A DNA stretch of 63,383 nucleotides, the filler included, from Dimorphilus gyrociliatus (Eukaryota; Animalia; Annelida): NCBI GenBank assembly GCA_904063045.1. It is 7 parts of 7 records of this genome, joined end to end, with 100 filler letters (N's around TTAATTAATTAA, not from the genome) between each part and the next. Parts side by side here need not be neighbours in the genome. Positions count along the whole stretch, not along the records: positions 26,505 to 34,818 come from CAJFCJ010000251.1; 6 more parts are not named here. One strand, 5' to 3'. The notes beneath the pieces are model-generated. The model saw only the letters and a program-made list of their open reading frames with translations, was not told where the DNA came from and searched no databases. Shown piece after piece: positions 26,505 to 34,818 of this stretch. The position numbers and the translations under genes are program-made. Within the stretch, counting starts at the first letter, position 1; every line of letters begins with the position of its first letter.

Positions 26505-29149
26505 TTGCTCTATTTGGGAACCAATGGCAATATACTGAGAATTATAATAATTAATAATGAATATATGTTTATTAAAATGTATTAAAAATGAAAAAAGCTA
26601 AGAATGTTATACAAAGTTTAAAAGTTACTAGAATAAAGTATAAAGTATGTTAAGACACTGAGAATTATTTTAAATAGATTAATGCAATCTTCTGCAAGAG
26701 GACAGCAGATGTAATCATTCCCAATTTGTATTCATCCCAACAGCAAATACTTGCTTCTGCTTCTGGATGACACTTTTCTTCTGATACTTCTTTAGCCTTT
26801 TTTCTGATAGAAGTTTCTCTACAACTGGAATAAGACTTGATTCCTGTTTTAAAATATCTATGAGCATATAAAATGACCCTTTTGCAGGAGTCTTTTCATT
26901 TATTCCTCTGTGCCATCCTTCAACATCATTGTTGGTCCTGATGGCAAGACCAAATACAGACCAACAATTTGGTGTCCAAATTGAATGCTTAATCCAAGTA
27001 CTTTCAATGTATTGGAAAAAATCCAAAAATTCATTTCTCTCAAAGCCTCATCTTTTAGCATGTAGAAACTGTTTAGAATGGCTTCATCTGGAAGAAAAGG
27101 TAATGCCAAAACTTGTTTCAGCAGTCCTGCCTTCTTCTTTTCCATATTATATTGTTGTGTGTATCCCAAATTCTACAATAATTTAATAATAAGGCCAACC
27201 ACTGAATTTAAATATAAGCTTACTTGAATTTTTCTGTAGACAGCTTGTGTCCAATGGAAGACACAACCTTGAATAGGAATATTAGGGTAAACTGAGTTAA
27301 GAGCACTCCATATACCTAATTCAAAATCAACTACAAATTTGTCAGGTTGAAAACCATTTGTCAATTTTTGAATCTCCTTTTGATAAGATGAAGTTAATGA
27401 AACAGAATTAAGCAACCAAATCATACTTACTTTAAGAATCATTTTGTACACTTTTTTTTTCTTTGATGTTAAAAAAGCAAATGCTAATGGAATTTGTTTT
27501 GCTTCTCCATCATGTTTAATAAAAGAATGAACAGAAAAAAGCTGTACAAATGGATCCTTCACAGCCTTGAAAGTGCCATCTAAATACCATACTTTACTTT
27601 TACATAATAAGGACAGCTGGTGCTTAGAAGCAAATGGTAAAACTCTTTGATTTCTTACAACAATATCACTTTGAAGAAAATCATCTGGTATAAATGTTGT
27701 ATTAAGTTCAAAATCAATTTCGTTTGGTTCTTTAGGCCTTGATTTTTGCCTATTGATATTGGCTAATCTCCTCAGATTTTCCAGTTTTGGTAGGTTATTT
27801 TCACTTTTATTTAAATTAATTAATAGATCTTCAGCAATTGCTCTTCCAGATGACTTGATGTCTGCATTACAGATTGCTCTCAATTCTTTTCTAGCAGAAA
27901 TATTCACAATAAGGCTTTTCCTTTTGTTATGATTGTGTTCATGTTTACTCTTTATGAAAATATTTCCTTTTGTTGAATAATAACTGGACATTGAATATTC
28001 TTATTTCTAACAGAACATCTCCAGATGGTTCTCTTGTCACTTCTAGATTTTATATTAAAAGCATAGCCATTGTTGGTCAAAATATCTTTCCCTTTTTGAC
28101 TTCCACCAATAATAATATGAAATTTGTCTGAGCTTTCCGTATTCTCATTATTTTCAGTTTCATTTTCATGCAATAAATTTTCCTCCATATTAAAGTATTG
28201 CTAACTTCTTTAAGACTACAATTGTCTTTAACCATATTATTATGAGTACAACTCAGAGCAGCTTTTACAATAGGATCATCATTGATCACATCTGATAAAC
28301 TAATGAGACAATATCTTTCACTCAAACTTTTGCATGAAGAACACTTATCATCTTTCATTTCTGTAATATTAAGCAAAGTTAAATAAATGTATGTTTTACA
28401 TAGTAAATATCACCTTTACAGATATGATGACAAAGTGAACATGTAGTTTCTTGAATCCTGAACTTTTCTGCACAATTATTGCAAAATACTCTTTCAGATT
28501 CTAAATTGAAAATGAAAAAAGTGAATAATTTAATAAAAACATATAAAGAGACAGACCTTTGATGCATTTGGCATGGACATAATCTTGGCAGTCATTGCAT
28601 TTCATCTTTCTCTGTCTGCCATAAAATCTTTATTACAATTAATACAAACAGGTGCCATTACTAAGTTTCTGCAAAAATAAATTCACTTTCAACTATCAAA
28701 TATGGCTGCCTATACAAAAATTATAAATAATAACTCACTGGAAAGAAGTGTTCTTAAAAATGTATAATCTTGTAATATTCAATAAACTAAATCAATACCA
28801 GAGTTTCAATGCTTAAAAAACAAATTAGCCTGAAAATATGCCAAGAAATGCAAAATTTATCTTTCACTTACAGACAAGACAAGGAAATAACTCATTTCTC
28901 TTTTAATAGCATTACATAATTCAGAGAAAACTGGTAAAAACATCACAATACATATCCCTTTCTTCAAAAATATTATTATTTTATTCTATAAATGAAATAA
29001 ACAGCAAAGAGAAAAACATTTCTGATTATAAGTATAAATAATTATACCAAGTATATCTTTAACCAGGCATAGGACGTTTTTTCCCAACAATTAGGACGTT
29101 TTTTCCTGCCCTGGGACGTTTTTTCCCAAGGACGCTTTTTCCCGACCCC
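26505..29149 (-). mobile_element. MULE element 4; spliced PHD-FLYWCH-MULE transposase 26715-28659; left TIR off contig
   Basis: MAPVCINC...CNDCQDYVHAKC; GSQKGKDIL..NGYAF...WRC; WYLDGTF, DFE, GCVFHWTQ, RTNNDVEGWH; GGACGTTTTTTCCC array at 29066-29149. Confidence 0.85.
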
Positions 29150-31917
29150 CTGTGTTACTTCTATTCCCTAACCATAAATTGGGAGCCCCCTAACCATAAA
29201 TCCATGCAAGATAGTTTCAAACTAACCCTCCCCTAAAATGTTATCAGGGTAGGTTATATTTGCAAACAGGTACATTCACACCTGACCCCAAATTACTTAC
29301 TTTGTTGTACTCATAATTGTAGGTATTTCTGGTTTGTCGCAATTTAATATGTCATTTTCAATCATTTACTAAATTATAAAAGTATTCACGCAAATAGAAC
29401 ATTTTAAGTTATCTACTTAAAAAATGAAATTTCTTGTGAAACTTACCAACAGAACACAAGTATTTCATTCAAAGAATGTTTATTGGATAAATGATTTTCT
29501 AGCTTTCAACAACAAGCTGACAGTTAAGAAGACTGATCTACCTACTGGTAAATTGTAAATAGTCGTCCAATAGTTGACAATTCACAGATTACAATTATTC
29601 ACACATGAACAAATGTATAATTTTTGGATAAAGGAAAAGTCTGAAAATAAGGTGTCCATATTTCTTGTTGTTGGTAGGTCAGATAATTGCATAAAATGTA
29701 ACCAGTTTTGGTAGAAATTGGATTGATTCCAACACACAAAAAGAGACATTTGTCATCATATTGCTGCTGTTCTTATATACCACAAATTATGAATAGTCAA
29801 TTGTTTGTGAAAAGTACTGTGTTTTAGACCAACTGCCTAAAATCAGACAATTGCAAATTGTTATGATTTTGAGTAGAAAACCAGAAGAACGTCTCCTAGT
29901 TAGCTCATACACAAAAACAACAAAGGACTTGTCACTGAACAAATGGATCAATATTTTAAAATACTCTGTAACAGTGAAACTGATAACAAATCCTGCCAAT
30001 TTGATGGAATTTCTTTGTCAAACTGGCCCTTCCAAGAGATTCTTACAAATGACATTTTAAACAGTTACCTATCTCTGAATCAGTGTTCAAAAGTTTTCAA
30101 CTCTTTCTAATCTTGCACAATGTTTACTTTATTAAAAGTAGCCATTGTACTATTAAAATTTGGGATTTGAATGCTCAGGTGATTAAGAGCTAGTTGAGTG
30201 CTTTAAGAGATGGATCTGTACTTTGTTGTATTGTAATTGTAGGAACTGCGAGCTCGTCAAATTCAAATTTGTCCTCTCCAATCATTTACCAATTTACCAA
30301 AGTACTCACACAAATAGAACCTTTCAAGTTCTGCTGTTCTAATATACGACAAGTTATTAATAATAATTGTTTGTCAAATGTACTTTGTTTCAGTGTAAGA
30401 CAGTGATAGAGTAAAGCTAAGACACTTGATCATCTAAAATAGTATTATGCATACTATACTGTTCAAAAGTGACAATAAGCTACAAACTACAAATATAAGT
30501 AGAATAGCATAAAATACAACTGCAATTCATGAAATATTGTGTGTATAATAAATAACTTTAATATTCAAGTTAAGTTGTAAAAGTATTTTACTAACTTTTA
30601 AAAAAGTGTAAAGAATAGTGTATATTGTACTAAAGGCGTGTATAGTACTGTATAATACTATTCCAACATTGCTGTCCATTCATCAATGGAATGTAACAAT
30701 TTTGGCCGCACACTCTGAAAAGTGTGTACTCATTAGTAAGCATATGCATACAGTGTATGATAATGAACTACAAGTGTGCATATAAGTTAATTAGGCTTAA
30801 TATTCAAATTAATTGTAAATTAGTATAAATGGTAGTGTATGTTGTATCTTAGGCATTCAGAGTACTGTATAATACTATTCCAATATTTCTTTTCCATTGA
30901 TGAATGGAATGTAACAATTTTGGGCAAACACTATGAAGTGTGTGTACTCCTTGGAAAGTATTTATGTATGGTGCACGTAAACTGCCTTTTGAAAAACCCT
31001 AAGTTGTACAATAGTAATATGTTTTTTTTTAATATTGACAACACAGGATTGGTAATGTCAATCCTATATTTATATTTTTCCTAGATTTATAAATAAAGAA
31101 ACTTGAAACTAATAAAAAAAATATAAATCTCTTTGTTATAATACTCTTTTATTTATTTATTGAAAATATTTCTATTCTTAATCCGATATCTAAGATTGTT
31201 GTCTTGAAAGAAATGATTGTCAGAAATAGGATCTTTGTTTGGGGATTTTGAAGGAGTGGTTAGGGGATCAAATAGTTTTGCCCTAATCCAACAACTGAAT
31301 GAATAAATTAACTTAATATGTATTAATATTAGGAATAATGATTTGAAAATGTTGTTGGAAATTATTAGTTATTTAGAGTTATTAGAGTTATAAAATATTT
31401 ATTTGTTTCATTAGGCCTATTTTATATTATTCAATGAATATTTTATTTATACATTGAATAGAAAAAAGAATACAAAAGAAATAATAAAAAAAGATACAAA
31501 AGAACTTGCTAGAGAACAAATTTAAATAGTGACACAGCTAGTGTAGGCAAAGATTTTTTCATAACTCTTGATATCAGAGTATCCTCTAGAATCCTTTACA
31601 AAAGCACATATAAAAAATATATATATTTTATTTTAGTGTTTTTATAATTAAAAAAAATAACAATAATTTTTAACAGTAGAAATAAGTATATTAAAATTGT
31701 AAGTAGCTCAATAAACATACAAAGAAAAGTGTAATTAATTAGGACAAAACATTTTGAGTCTGAAATAAATCATTATATCACAAAGAAAACTATCCATTGC
31801 CCAATATTGTCAGTAGGAGGCGCCTTGGAGTCTTAGCAAACACTACAACAGCATTTTTATTTGTGACTCCAACAAGTCACAAAAAGAGAAAGTTTGGCAT
31901 TTTTTGAAGAAATACAA

Positions 31918-32526
31918 ATGGAGGTGGGACTTATTAATTCAGCTGGTAGGTACCTGACAGCTGAATTGTTTGGATTCAGAATTAATGCAACTGCAACAAC
32001 TTTGGGAAAGAAACAATGTTGGTTTATTGAACCTGGTGATAATAATGTTTTCTACATAAGATCTCATCTTGGACGATATTTAAGTGGTGATGAAAAGGGA
32101 AATGTCTCATGTACATCAGAAAGTAAAGGACCTAATGAGCAATTTATTATTGAGTATTGTCCAGAAAATTCAGGACGCTGGGCTCTCCGAAATCAGCAAA
32201 CAAGTCGCTATTTTGGAGGCAATGAAGACCTTTTGAAATGTTATGAGAAAGAACCAACTTCCATGGAATGGTGGATTGCACATTTGGCCATTCATCCTCA
32301 AATAAATTTACAACATGTCCATAGAAAGACAGTTGCTTGTCTAAAAGACAACAGCTTGTTATGCATGAAGACCATTCCATGGGGTAGTGATAGTCTTATC
32401 ACCATTGAATGGGAAGGTAAAGATGGAGAAGCAAAATACAGTTTTAAATCAGCTAATAATCTTTATCTTGTACAAAATGGAGATTTAAAGGAAAACTCAT
32501 CACAGGCATGTTTATACAGACTTGAG
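31918..32526 (+). CDS. Fascin (actin-bundling beta-trefoil protein), 5' part only
   Basis: VGLINSAGRYLTAELFGF.INA, RSHLGRYLS.D..G, RWALRN...RYFGG, W..HLAIHPQINL, PWG.DSLIT; ends at a short N gap. Confidence 0.85.
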
Positions 32527-32669
32527 NNNNNNNNNNTTAACTATCAAAGTCACCTTTTTTTGAAAATATAATTAATTATACATATAAAATTAACACTTTT
32601 CTATAAAGTTTTCAAAAGAAAAAGGTTTTTTTTTTGATTTTTTCACCTATTTTTTCATCGTTTTAATTT

Positions 32670-32744
32670 TGTGGACATTTTCTGTCTTTTGTGGACATTT
32701 TCTGTTGTGGACGTTTTCTGTTGTGGACGTTTTCTGTCTGAACC
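32670..32744. repeat. Orphan MULE-type TIR end (GTGGAC[A/G]TTTTCTG x4)
   Basis: Ends TCTGAACC, the reverse complement of the GGTTCAG start of MULE 3. Confidence 0.65.
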
Positions 32745-33100
32745 GTTTTATATAGGTTTGAACTAGACACTGAGGTCTCAGTTCTGATGAAAGTTGAATA
32801 ACTTGCACCAAACTTTCAGAAGATCCCATATTGGAATGCAAGACTAAGAACTTATTGTACAATATAGACCAAGCACACTCCACATCATAAGTCCATTGAT
32901 TTTTCTTTTAATTTGTATTATTGTTTTAAGGTAGTTATTTATTGCAGCACAGGTTCTCCTCACCCTTGTTGAGAATTTGTGATTGTGTATCTGTTGGAGA
33001 TACAGTTACATATTAGGCTACACCAACCCTTAGCCAAATCTTGGTTACAAGTGTGAGAACACTTTTGGGATTACAAGTCTGTACTGACTGGACAAATTCC

Positions 33101-33175
33101 TAACCCCAAGTCCTAACCCTAACCTAACCCTAAACTTTTTGTGGAACCATAATTAACCCTAACCCTAACCTTACC
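33101..33175 (-). repeat. Degenerate interstitial telomere-like repeats (CCCTAA orientation)
   Basis: TAACCCCAAGTCCTAACCCTAACCTAACCCT ... AACCCTAACCCTAACC. Confidence 0.8.
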
Positions 33176-33632
33176 CTGTGTAGGATACAATAGAGGCATA
33201 GTGAATTTAGTATTAATAGAAGTATACAAAGAAGCTTTACATCTGGTTCATAATTGTTGTGCAAAGTATTATAGCATGTTCAATACTACTCAATAGTAAA
33301 AAAGATTTACAATTTGAAAATACAAATATAAAAAATGGTCAAGGACTTCTGTTTCATATGAATTAGAATGGTGCAACAATAGAAATACTTGTATTTCATA
33401 GGCTACAACAGAAAATGTTGGCTTTTTTTAAGCAATATTATTTTAAGTTTATATTAAGATATATTGAAATTTTGAAAGTTTTGTACTGTCAATGTTCTTC
33501 AGGTTTATTTTAAGCACAACTAGTTTAAAACCAGTTTTACAGCACTAGCTTAAAAATGTCAATGACAGAAGACAAGACGTTATTTCAATCTTGAATTTCT
33601 TTGGAAGAAAAACAATTTTATGTACTAAAGAA

Positions 33633-33949
33633 ATGAACAAAAAACTAATTATTGTTTGCTTGGTTGTTTGCCTTTCTGTTCATGCTCTTTCTATCTCTCA
33701 AGCTCCTGCAGGCAATTTGAGATCAATTTTGGAACAAATGGAAAAGAGAGAGGAATTGGAAAACACACTTCAATATGAGTTGAACAAGAAAGAAACGTTA
33801 ACTAAAGTAAGTTACTTATGTTAATGATAACAAGAATTTATTCAATTTCGTTACAGTATGATAAGTGTATAAAACGATGTGGAGTCTTCAAGACGAGATC
33901 TATGTATGAATTGTGCATTCGCAAATGTGTGAGAAAGCATTTATTGTAA
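33633..33949 (+). CDS. Two-exon secreted precursor (88 aa) of a cationic CX3C-X11-CX3C peptide
   Basis: Exon 33633-33806, phase-0 GT-AG intron 33807-33856, exon 33857-33949; signal-peptide-like N-terminus, acidic spacer with KR/KK, C-terminal YDKCIKRCGVFKTRSMYELCIRKCVRKHLL; AATAAA at 33996. Confidence 0.75.
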
Positions 33950-34085
33950 CATTTGCTAACAAAACAATTAATATTACTTTGTAATGGGTTTTGACAATAA
34001 ATTTGAATTTAATTTCAATGGCAACTTGTTTTAATAAAATTGTTGTAAGGGTTAGGTTAGGTCTTGGGGTTAGGGTTAGGGTTAG

Positions 34086-34346
34086 GGTTTTTATAATGTT
34101 GAACTAGATACTAAGATCTAAGTTCTGACAAAAGTCGAATAATTTTTATCGAAAGTTTCAAGAGATTCCAAGTTGGAATGCAAGAGTAAGAACTATTTGT
34201 ACAACTAGGTTAGGGTTACACAGGGGTTTTTATAATGTTGAACTAGATACTAAGATCTAAGTTCTGACAAAAGTCGAATAACTTTTATCGAAAGTTTCAA
34301 GAGATTCCAAGTTGGAATGCAAGAGTAAGAACTATTTGTACAACTA
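34086..34346 (+). repeat. Tandem ~122-bp subtelomeric duplication separated by a telomere-seeded spacer
   Basis: 34086-34207 is nearly identical to 34225-34346; GGTTAGGGTTACACAGGGGT lies at 34208-34227; a diverged relative sits at ~32755-32875. Confidence 0.9.
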
Positions 34347-34421
34347 TGATGAATTTTTTTGTTGAGTATATGTTGTATGGTGATCTATGTTTGAATTTTT
34401 AAATGATTGCCAAAGAATTTT

Positions 34422-34471
34422 TGACCTACCATGGTTTCGTCTTCCCCTTTAGCAAAGACTCATCAGGGTCA
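34422..34471 (-). ncRNA. Minimal type I hammerhead ribozyme
   Basis: Minus strand UGACC-CUGAUGA-GUCUU(loop)AAGAC-GAAA-CCAUG-GUA-GGUCA: intact core, stems I and II, palindromic short stem III, GUA cleavage triplet. Confidence 0.88.
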
Positions 34472-34625
34472 TTTCTGAGTATAGCTTCTCTTACTGCTAG
34501 GGTTAGGGTTAGGTTAGGGTTAGGGTTTGGTAAGGGTTATGGGTTAGGCCACTCACACAACTCTGGTAATGTTTTTGGGAACTGGTTAGCTAGTGTTCCA
34601 GTGTAATACCTAACTTTTACTCAAT

Positions 34626-34818
34626 GGGTTAGGGTTAGGGTTAGGTTAGGGTTAGGGTTAGGGTTAGGTTAGGGTTAGGGTTAGGGTTAGGGTTAGGGTT
34701 AGGGTTAGGGTTAGGTTAGGGTTAGGGTTAGGGTTAGGTTAGGGTTAGGTTAGGGTTAGGGTTAGGGTTAGGGTTAGGTTAGGGTTAGGGTTAGGGTTAG
34801 GGTTAGGGTTAGGTTAGG
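34626..34818 (+). repeat. Terminal telomeric array (TTAGGG)n with interspersed TTAGG
   Basis: G-rich strand runs to the contig 3' end; shorter tracts at 34048-34088 and 34498-34546. Confidence 0.9.

What the first reader, a model, noticed from the sequence alone, without database searches (positions are those of the whole stretch)
34048..34818. Hammerhead ribozyme embedded among telomeric tracts at a chromosome end
The order on + is: TTAGGG tract, 122-bp unit, GGTTAGGGTTACACAGGGGT, second unit, minus-strand hammerhead, TTAGGG tract, spacer, terminal array. A telomere-to-centromere RNA would contain the ribozyme and end in CCCUAA repeats. That is the described 3'-end layout of endonuclease-deficient Penelope-like elements (Athena/terminons), which prime on the G-rich overhang. 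The palindromic stem III (ACCAUGGU) matches the dimer-type minimal hammerheads of Penelope elements and retrozymes. No RT is in the window, so this would be a truncated or non-autonomous unit, or a self-cleaving subtelomeric (antisense-TERRA-like) RNA.
Basis: partly seen in the sequence, partly recalled or inferred. Interest (0 to 1): 0.8.

Follow-up and report, generated by a model that had tools for sequence, protein, structure and literature searches.

The report
Hammerhead retroelement tail at a telomere
A genuine Penelope-type hammerhead ribozyme sits in a 5'-cut copy of a repeated retroelement stacked between short telomere tracts at a chromosome end. This looks like the telomere-attaching retroelements known from rotifers and fungi, but no reverse transcriptase could be linked to it.

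Summary
The piece (26505-34818) contains one type-I hammerhead, on the minus strand at 34471-34422. It has an intact core, a 5-bp helix I, a 6-bp helix II, the palindromic helix III ACCAUGGU, and a predicted cut at 34427|34426.

- Contigs from public runs show the unit-plus-hammerhead is a repeated family found in many contexts.
- Other copies continue past 34499, so this copy is 5'-truncated and capped by telomere repeats.
- At least three other copies also have their unit 3' end next to TTAGGG-like repeats.
- The 120-nt unit is a discrete RNA module with three hairpins. These hairpins are kept through compensatory changes in a 79%-identical third copy (32747-32865).

This fits telomere-primed addition of a Penelope-like or non-autonomous element. 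It differs from Athena/Terminons in one respect: the ribozyme is 125-200 nt from the C-strand tail, not directly next to it. No RT or GIY-YIG domain is in the piece, no RNA data exist, Rfam stays below threshold, and the organism is unidentified. Insertion by an endonuclease specific for telomere repeats cannot be excluded. I rate it a new variant of a known kind, of moderate interest.

The parts
34422..34471 (-). Type-I hammerhead ribozyme motif. Helix I is UGACC/GGUCA. The core is CUGAUGA...GAA. Helix II is 6 bp with a 9-nt loop. Helix III is the palindrome ACCAUGGU. H17 = A at 34427, and the predicted cut is between 34427 and 34426.
   Evidence: It is the only descriptor hit in the piece, and such hits are rare in shuffles. 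The MFE fold recovers helices I and II. The dimer fold forms an 8-bp intermolecular helix III. In four public runs this is the part held by the most contig pieces, several of them with different flanks. Rfam scores are weak only.
34472..34497 (-). Element sequence upstream of the hammerhead (RNA sense), ending at the 5'-truncation point.
   Evidence: Loose ends at 34474 and 34494 show other copies reading on as ...CTTACTGCTA-CCTTGAAGGGGAGG..., where this copy switches to GGGTTAGGG.
34347..34421 (-). A 75-nt spacer between the hammerhead and unit 2, specific to one subfamily.
   Evidence: Contigs of run X1 join 34342/34343 directly to 34413 or 34421. One other 180-nt contig carries unit, spacer and hammerhead contiguously (tables 5 and 8).
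34227..34346 (-). Unit 2: a 120-nt 3'-terminal module with three hairpins, followed in RNA sense by CCCCUGUGUAACCCUAACC.
34208..34226 (+). T2: a short telomere-like tract with the variant TTACACAGGGG, between the two units.
   Evidence: TACACAGGG occurs only twice in the window, both times beside telomere-like tracts.
34088..34207 (-). Unit 1: the same module alone, differing at one base. It is either a severely 5'-truncated copy or one half of a 139-bp tandem duplication.
   Evidence: (D4).
34045..34089 (+). T1: an internal TTAGGG-like tract directly after the 3' UTR of the small gene. It is degenerate on the proximal side and perfect next to unit 1.
34498..34548 (+). T3: a TTAGGG-like tract that caps the truncated 5' end of the hammerhead copy.
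34549..34625 (.). A 77-nt stretch of unknown origin between T3 and the terminal array. It may be another short terminal addition.
   Evidence: It has no similarity to anything else in the piece.
34626..34818 (+). The terminal (TTAGGG)n array with interspersed TTAGG units, G-strand reading outward to the end of the piece.
   Evidence: 33 copies, periods 6/23/29.
32747..32865 (-). A diverged third copy of the unit (about 79% identical). Its 3' end (RNA sense) is followed by a 16-nt tandem repeat instead of telomere repeats.
   Evidence: The tandem array is at 32668-32744.
33099..33177 (+). Telomere-like tracts in the opposite (CCCTAA) orientation. They share the odd variant CCCCAAG(T/A)CC with T1 and the motif TACACAGGG with T2.
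   Evidence: (I5, I14).

Best explanation
The locus is a chromosome end carrying stacked, 5'-truncated copies of one retroelement family. All copies have their RNA sense on the minus strand, so their 3' ends face the centromere.

The 3' region of the family, in RNA sense, is:
1. a Penelope-type type-I hammerhead
2. in this subfamily, a 75-nt spacer
3. a conserved 120-nt three-hairpin module
4. two or three C-strand telomere repeats.

The most likely mechanism is this. The C-strand tail of the RNA pairs with the G-rich end of the chromosome, and that end primes reverse transcription by an RT supplied in trans or by a full-length relative. The cDNA stops early, and telomerase then adds new TTAGGG repeats. 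This happened at least twice here (unit 1, then unit 2 with the hammerhead), and possibly a third time (34549-34625).

The hammerhead most likely acts only when two copies pair through helix III. It would then process multimeric or paired transcripts rather than this single copy.

Shown: the motif, the order and orientation of the parts, the truncation, the repeated nature of the family, the telomere-like repeats at other copies' 3' ends, and the conserved RNA structure of the module.

Inferred: priming on the overhang, the identity of the RT, and ribozyme activity.
For: - Motif and chance test.
- Dimer pairing.
- Order and orientation.
- Family behaviour in public contigs: 48 contig pieces laid in run X1. 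Pieces matching only 34422-34473 have unrelated flanks in runs of two coded organisms.
- Other copies' 3' ends: unit starts at 34224 and 34237 are preceded by ...TAAGGGTTA...TTACGGGTTA and ...GGGTTAGGGTTATGTTAGG, and then by unrelated DNA.
- Truncation: other copies continue beyond 34499.
- Unit structure: z = -2.46 for the single sequence. The three hairpins are kept in the 79%-identical copy, with 2 compensatory and 4 wobble-compatible changes.
- Structure statistics: 24 of 25 pairs kept despite 9 substitutions in paired columns, against a random mean of 18.4 (P about 1e-4). The minus sense pairs better than the plus sense.
- Literature: EN-deficient PLEs attach to G-rich overhangs using reverse-complement telomeric repeats together with hammerhead motifs. 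[quoted passage not shown]
Against: - No RT is in the 8.3-kb piece, and the rest of the genome could not be searched.
- The hammerhead is not adjacent to the telomere-complementary tail.
- The family appears in many contexts, with only 2-3 telomere-like repeats before unrelated DNA. That could mean interstitial, endonuclease-mediated copies.
- Copy 3 ends in a 16-nt tandem repeat, not telomere repeats.
- Units 1 and 2 differ at one base, so they could be a local 139-bp tandem duplication rather than two additions.
- No RNA run holds the stretch.
- The best DNA holder may be the very sample the assembly came from.
Confidence: 0.55

Rival explanations
1. The same family is mobilised by an endonuclease-bearing Penelope-like element, or is a retrozyme-like non-autonomous derivative of one, that prefers telomere-like repeats as target. 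On this reading the copies were inserted into an existing telomeric or subtelomeric array, or spread there by subtelomeric duplication. They were not added to the free end.
For: The family occurs in many contexts, with short TTAGGG-like stretches followed by unrelated DNA. Canonical EN+ PLEs all carry hammerheads in their pseudo-LTRs and show microsatellite target bias (PMC8557442). Animal retrozymes derive from PLE pseudo-LTRs, and their multimers are enriched at chromosome ends (10.64898/2026.07.22.740005). Insertion of a 5'-truncated copy into an array leaves telomere repeats on both sides, just as seen here. Inverted telomere-like tracts nearby (I5) show that rearrangement has occurred in this region.
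Against: Both hammerhead-family copies at the end have the one orientation expected for priming from the G-strand end. The tracts between pieces are very short (19-51 nt), as in Athena arrays. No endonuclease gene is in the piece. No PLE with telomere-repeat target specificity turned up in the papers I read.
Confidence: 0.3
2. The hammerhead serves the host. On this reading it is part of a subtelomeric, telomere-to-centromere non-coding RNA that cleaves itself, with the retroelement origin incidental.
For: Only the geometry and the strong conservation of the 52-nt ribozyme core across contexts.
Against: No RNA run holds the stretch. The ribozyme occurs once here and by its helix III should need a partner copy. 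Conservation across many repeat copies is what a mobile family gives on its own.
Confidence: 0.05
3. The arrangement is an assembly artefact at a contig end, such as mis-joined repeat reads, or the motif is a chance match.
For: A 10-N scaffold gap lies 1.5 kb upstream (32528-32537). TTAGG variants in the array could be homopolymer errors. Rfam scores are far below threshold.
Against: Contigs of run X1 reproduce 34238-34346 and 34317-34427 without a single difference, although this may be the same sample. The descriptor hit is rare in shuffles, and the same ribozyme recurs in other contigs and in a second coded organism.
Confidence: 0.05

Closest known systems
Athena / Terminon endonuclease-deficient Penelope-like elements of bdelloid rotifers
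   Same: Located at the chromosome end. The 3' end faces the centromere. There is a short reverse-complement telomeric stretch at the 3' end and a minimal type-I hammerhead near it. Copies are 5'-truncated and capped by short telomeric tracts, and a host gene lies between tracts (PMC6431247, PMC8557442).
   Different: Here the telomere repeat is TTAGGG, not TGTGGG, so the host is not a rotifer (PMC7943196). A conserved 120-nt three-hairpin module, with or without a 75-nt spacer, separates the hammerhead from the tail. No RT, ORF or accessory genes are seen. The family looks more widely dispersed.
Coprina EN-deficient PLEs (fungi, diatom, clubmoss, kuruma shrimp)
   Same: Elements at the very chromosome end, flanked by telomeric repeats on both sides, with terminal direct repeats that carry hammerheads. 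They occur in hosts with TTAGGG-type telomeres (PMC13159263, PMC4209133).
   Different: Fungal and protist Coprina hammerheads have a long helix III and cleave as monomers (PMC4209133). This one has the short palindromic helix III typical of metazoan PLEs. No RT is available here to place it.
Minimal or short-helix-III type-I hammerheads in pseudo-LTRs of EN+ Penelope-like elements
   Same: Helix I of 4-5 bp, a longer helix II, a small palindromic helix III, a predicted dimeric mode of action, and many dispersed copies that mostly belong to truncated elements (PMC4209133, PMC7761336).
   Different: Those elements insert inside chromosomes using GIY-YIG, often at (TA)n. A telomere-complementary tail is not part of their description.
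Metazoan non-LTR retrozymes
   Same: Type-I hammerhead, non-coding, probably dependent on PLE machinery, and enriched near chromosome ends when multimeric (PMC7229834 abstract, 10.64898/2026.07.22.740005).
   Different: Retrozymes are head-to-tail repeats in which every 150-400-nt unit carries a hammerhead. Here there is a single hammerhead, and the duplicated unit lacks one.
[quoted passage not shown]
   Same: Retroelements stacked in fixed orientation at or within telomeric arrays (PMC5537684).
   Different: These belong to a different RT class, have no ribozyme, and have poly(A) or endonuclease-defined junctions.

Membership tests
Hammerhead ribozyme (type I) | Conserved core CUGANGA ... 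GAAA and a UH cleavage site in the right order | tested here: met
   Exact core, with GUA at the cleavage site.
Hammerhead ribozyme (type I) | Three helices around the core, with helix I open | tested here: met
   Helix I is 5 bp and helix II is 6 bp. Helix III is 2 bp plus a CAUG loop in a monomer, or 8 bp between two copies.
Hammerhead ribozyme (type I) | Score at or above Rfam gathering threshold | tested here: not met
   Best score 17.3 bits against 48.5. Nothing was found on the whole piece. Rfam models do not cover short-helix-III PLE variants well, so this is weak evidence against.
Hammerhead ribozyme (type I) | Self-cleavage | not testable with these tools
   This needs in vitro transcription of monomer and dimer constructs.
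EN-deficient Penelope-like elements (Athena/Coprina/Terminon) | PLE-clade reverse transcriptase without GIY-YIG endonuclease | tested here: inconclusive
   No RT or endonuclease domain was found in any ORF of 50 aa or more in the piece. The copy is 5'-truncated, and the genome could not be searched.
EN-deficient Penelope-like elements (Athena/Coprina/Terminon) | Short reverse-complement telomeric repeats at the element's 3' end | tested here: met
   T1 and T2 follow the units in RNA sense. Three other copies in public contigs show the same. Copy 3 is an exception.
EN-deficient Penelope-like elements (Athena/Coprina/Terminon) | Hammerhead immediately upstream of those repeats | tested here: not met
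   About 200 nt lie between the cut site and T2 here, and about 125 nt in copies without the spacer.
EN-deficient Penelope-like elements (Athena/Coprina/Terminon) | Terminal position, 3' end toward the centromere, 5' truncation capped by telomeric repeats | tested here: met
EN-deficient Penelope-like elements (Athena/Coprina/Terminon) | Copies confined to chromosome ends | tested here: inconclusive
   Many contig contexts were seen, but contigs cannot show chromosomal position.
Non-LTR retrozyme | Tandem head-to-tail units, each with a hammerhead | tested here: not met
   There is a single hammerhead in the piece, even with one core mismatch allowed. The duplicated unit has none.
Non-LTR retrozyme | Circular RNA product | not testable with these tools
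   No RNA run holds the stretch.

The most novel reading that the evidence does not exclude
An animal with ordinary TTAGGG telomeres may host a repeated, non-coding, hammerhead-bearing element that is copied directly onto free chromosome ends. It would do this through a C-strand telomeric tail and a conserved three-hairpin 3' module. That would be a SINE-like counterpart of rotifer Terminons, working alongside telomerase, with a 3' architecture (ribozyme, structured module, tail) not described for Athena or Coprina.
Probability: 0.3. Interest if true: 0.7.

Novelty: new variant of a known kind. Interest (0 to 1): 0.55.

Why it matters
Penelope-like elements that lack an endonuclease are the closest relatives of telomerase. 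They are thought to show how reverse transcription at chromosome ends began. In animals they are documented mainly in bdelloid rotifers, with one report from a shrimp.

A hammerhead element stacked at a TTAGGG telomere in another animal would widen that picture. If the three-hairpin module is the RT recognition site, it would also give a compact substrate for testing telomere-primed reverse transcription and dimer-dependent ribozyme processing.

If the endonuclease rival is right, the case would instead be a Penelope-like family with a preference for telomere repeats as target, which I did not find described in the papers I read.

Tried and rejected
- **Rfam.** I scanned the whole piece and three short stretches. 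No family reached threshold, and the unit matches no known RNA family.
- **Second ribozyme on the + strand.** A hammerhead-like core on the + strand of copy 3 (CTGATGA..GAAT) looked like one. It fails the descriptor even with one mismatch and has no Rfam support, so I dropped it.
- **tRNA-derived SINE head.** No tRNA-like sequence was found.
- **Longer copy of the element in the window.** The 21-nt continuation seen in other contigs is absent.
- **Metagenome scans.** Scans for the ribozyme and for the unit core were both blank.
- **Exact-protein look-up of the MULE ORF.** Not on record.
- **Organism identification.**
  - The best MULE hit is 46% identical (an annelid protein).
  - The best fascin hit is 72% identical, on unnamed Logan contigs. 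The named hits are vertebrate fascin-2 at about 42%.
  - The related contigs L001 and L002 have no hammerhead or telomere tract and carry different neighbouring genes.
  - Rotifers are excluded by their TGTGGG telomere repeat (PMC7943196).
- **Papers not held.** Arkhipova 2017, Gladyshev 2007 and Lunse 2017.
- By my own choice I gave them only 34090-34496, leaving the telomere tracts out.

Full report
**What is there**

The minus strand reads UGACC-CUGAUGA-(21-nt helix II hairpin)-GAA-ACCAUGGU-A-GGUCA. This is a type-I hammerhead with an intact core. H17 is at 34427, so the predicted cut lies between 34427 and 34426.

A descriptor I wrote finds this as the only hit on either strand of the 8.3-kb piece. 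Only 4 of 2000 Markov shuffles gave any hit, even at looser stem thresholds. Allowing one core mismatch adds nothing.

The minimum-energy fold recovers helices I and II. Two copies together fold to -38.4 kcal/mol, against -13.3 for one, by forming an 8-bp helix III between them. This is the behaviour described for metazoan type-I and Penelope-associated hammerheads with a short palindromic helix III (PMC4209133, PMC7761336).

Rfam does not call it. There was nothing on the whole piece. On a short stretch the matches were only 17.3 and 14.5 bits, though the second alignment reproduces the type-I topology.

**The surroundings**

From the centromere side, the + strand carries the following:
- a small two-exon gene, ending near 34040
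- tract T1, 34045-34089
- unit 1, 34088-34207
- the 19-nt tract T2
- unit 2, 34227-34346
- a 75-nt spacer
- the hammerhead on the opposite strand
- 26 nt of further element sequence
- tract T3, 34498-34548
- 77 nt of unknown origin
- a TTAGGG array from 34626 to the end of the piece.

All G-rich tracts point outward, as expected at a right-hand chromosome end.

No ORF of 50 aa or more in the piece has an RT or GIY-YIG domain. The recognisable genes are a MULE/FLYWCH transposase-like gene and the first 200 codons of a fascin gene, which is cut by a 10-N gap.

**Evidence from other copies**

I gave the run search only 34090-34496, deliberately leaving out the telomere tracts. It found DNA contig sets of two coded organisms and no RNA run.

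Laying four runs at 80% likeness showed several things.
- The family is repeated. Forty-eight contig pieces were laid in X1 alone, with likeness from over 99% to under 90%.
- The 52-nt ribozyme core (34422-34473) recurs with one difference inside contigs whose flanks are unrelated to this locus, in both organisms. It is the most conserved part.
- Some copies join the end of the unit (34342/34343) directly to the hammerhead (34413 or 34421). The 75-nt spacer is therefore a subfamily insertion, and the usual order is hammerhead then unit.
- Other copies continue beyond 34499 (...CTTACTGCTA-CCTTGAAGGGGAGG...), where this copy switches to GGGTTAGGG. This copy is therefore 5'-truncated in RNA sense and capped by telomere repeats.
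- In three further contexts the start of the unit on the + strand, which is its 3' end in RNA sense, is preceded by TTAGGG-like repeats and then by unrelated DNA.

Contig depth cannot be read as copy number, and X1 may be the sample behind the assembly. I use these data only for presence and context.

**The unit is a structured RNA module**

A third copy, 79% identical, lies at 32747-32865 in the same orientation.

The homology has sharp borders. It stops at the same base where unit 1 meets T2, and where other contigs join the unit to the hammerhead.

Unit 2 alone folds into three hairpins (z = -2.46). The consensus fold of the three copies keeps all three hairpins, with two compensatory double changes and four wobble-compatible single changes.

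Copy 3 has nine substitutions in paired columns yet keeps 24 of 25 pairs. The random expectation is 18.4 pairs (P about 1e-4). The helices pair better in the minus sense than in the plus sense.

The structure was partly derived from these same sequences, so this is suggestive rather than proof. Even so, it sets the RNA sense of the unit to that of the hammerhead.

**How it most likely works**

In RNA sense, the 3' region of the family is hammerhead, then three-hairpin module, then two or three C-strand telomere repeats.

EN-deficient Penelope-like elements are described as follows (PMC8557442, PMC6431247, PMC13159263):
- They attach to the G-rich overhang through such reverse-complement repeats combined with a hammerhead.
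- Host genes can be caught between copies.

The orientation, the very short tracts, the truncation and the terminal position here all fit repeated telomere-primed reverse transcription followed by telomerase healing. I give this reading 0.55.

Three things keep it from being more.
- No RT can be tied to the family.
- The hammerhead is 125-200 nt from the tail instead of directly next to it. This fails one defining feature of the published Athena/Terminon layout.
- The many contexts, with only a few telomere-like repeats before unrelated DNA, are equally what an endonuclease with a preference for telomere-like targets would leave. Subtelomeric duplication would leave the same pattern. I give this rival 0.3.

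Units 1 and 2 differ at a single base, so they may be a local 139-bp duplication rather than two separate additions.

A host non-coding RNA role has no support beyond geometry. Artefact or chance is unlikely given the exact contig matches and the recurrence of the ribozyme.

**Comparison and novelty**

The ribozyme belongs with the Penelope-type short-helix-III hammerheads.

The locus works like an Athena or Coprina terminal addition, but I do not file it as a member of either. The RT is untested and the adjacency feature is not met.

It is not a retrozyme in the strict sense, because there is one hammerhead and the repeated unit lacks one.

The host is an animal: it has fascin and FLYWCH, roughly 30% GC (range 25-33%) and 50-nt introns. 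It has TTAGGG telomeres and is not a rotifer (PMC7943196). I could not name it.

EN-deficient PLEs are said to be restricted to a few lineages and absent from vertebrates (10.64898/2026.07.22.740005). Another animal case with a different 3' architecture would be a new variant of a known kind.

**Limits**

- Three key papers are not in the library.
- The metagenome scans were blank.
- No RNA data exist for this stretch.

Noticed in passing
window 33099-33177 versus 34045-34089 and 34217-34225: Telomere-like tracts in the opposite (CCCTAA) orientation lie 870 bp upstream of T1. They share two odd variants with the outward-facing tracts: CCCCAAG(T/A)CC with T1, and TACACAGGG with T2. TACACAGGG has only these two occurrences in the window, against 0.04 expected. 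The small gene is thus bracketed by CCCTAA on the left and TTAGGG on the right, like a fragment healed at both ends, an inverted duplication, or an element with telomere-like inverted ends. This remains unexplained.
   Followed up: partly
window 33633-33806 and 33857-33949 (+), intron 33807-33856: A predicted 88-aa secreted pre-pro-peptide. It has a hydrophobic signal, an acidic middle and a cationic C-terminus with a CX3C...CX3C pattern. There is no Pfam match. Poly(A) signals lie at 33996 and 34033, a few bases before the first telomere tract. It looks like an antimicrobial or toxin-like peptide gene that is the last gene on the chromosome.
   Followed up: partly
window 26715-28660 (-): A multi-exon gene with a FLYWCH zinc finger and a MULE transposase domain. 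Its closest relatives are only 34-46% identical and come from an annelid, a starfish and a sea anemone.
   Followed up: partly
window 31918-32527 (+), gap 32528-32537: The N-terminal 202 codons of a fascin gene, without an intron, cut off by a 10-N scaffold gap. The subtelomeric block therefore sits on a separate contig joined by scaffolding. The 72%-identical gene of a related organism (L001, L002) has Maf1, a RING/RanBP zinc-finger gene and Cbl as neighbours, and no telomere tracts.
   Followed up: partly
window 29066-29145 and 32668-32744: Two tandem arrays built on the shared core GGACGTTTT: about four units of 15-20 nt, and 4.1 units of 16 nt. The second array directly abuts the 3' end (RNA sense) of the diverged unit copy, where the young copies have telomere repeats.
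   Followed up: no
window 34626-34818, also 34055-34065, 34510-34516 and 33118-33128: TTAGG units are interspersed among the TTAGGG repeats, with periods of 23 and 29 in the terminal array. The same variant occurs in the short internal tracts, which suggests it is real rather than a homopolymer read error.
   Followed up: no
window 29298-29410 / 30219-30330, 29764-29827 / 30331-30393, 30596-30743 / 30813-30961: Three pairs of direct repeats, 76-84% identical, from unidentified repeat families between the MULE gene and fascin.
   Followed up: no
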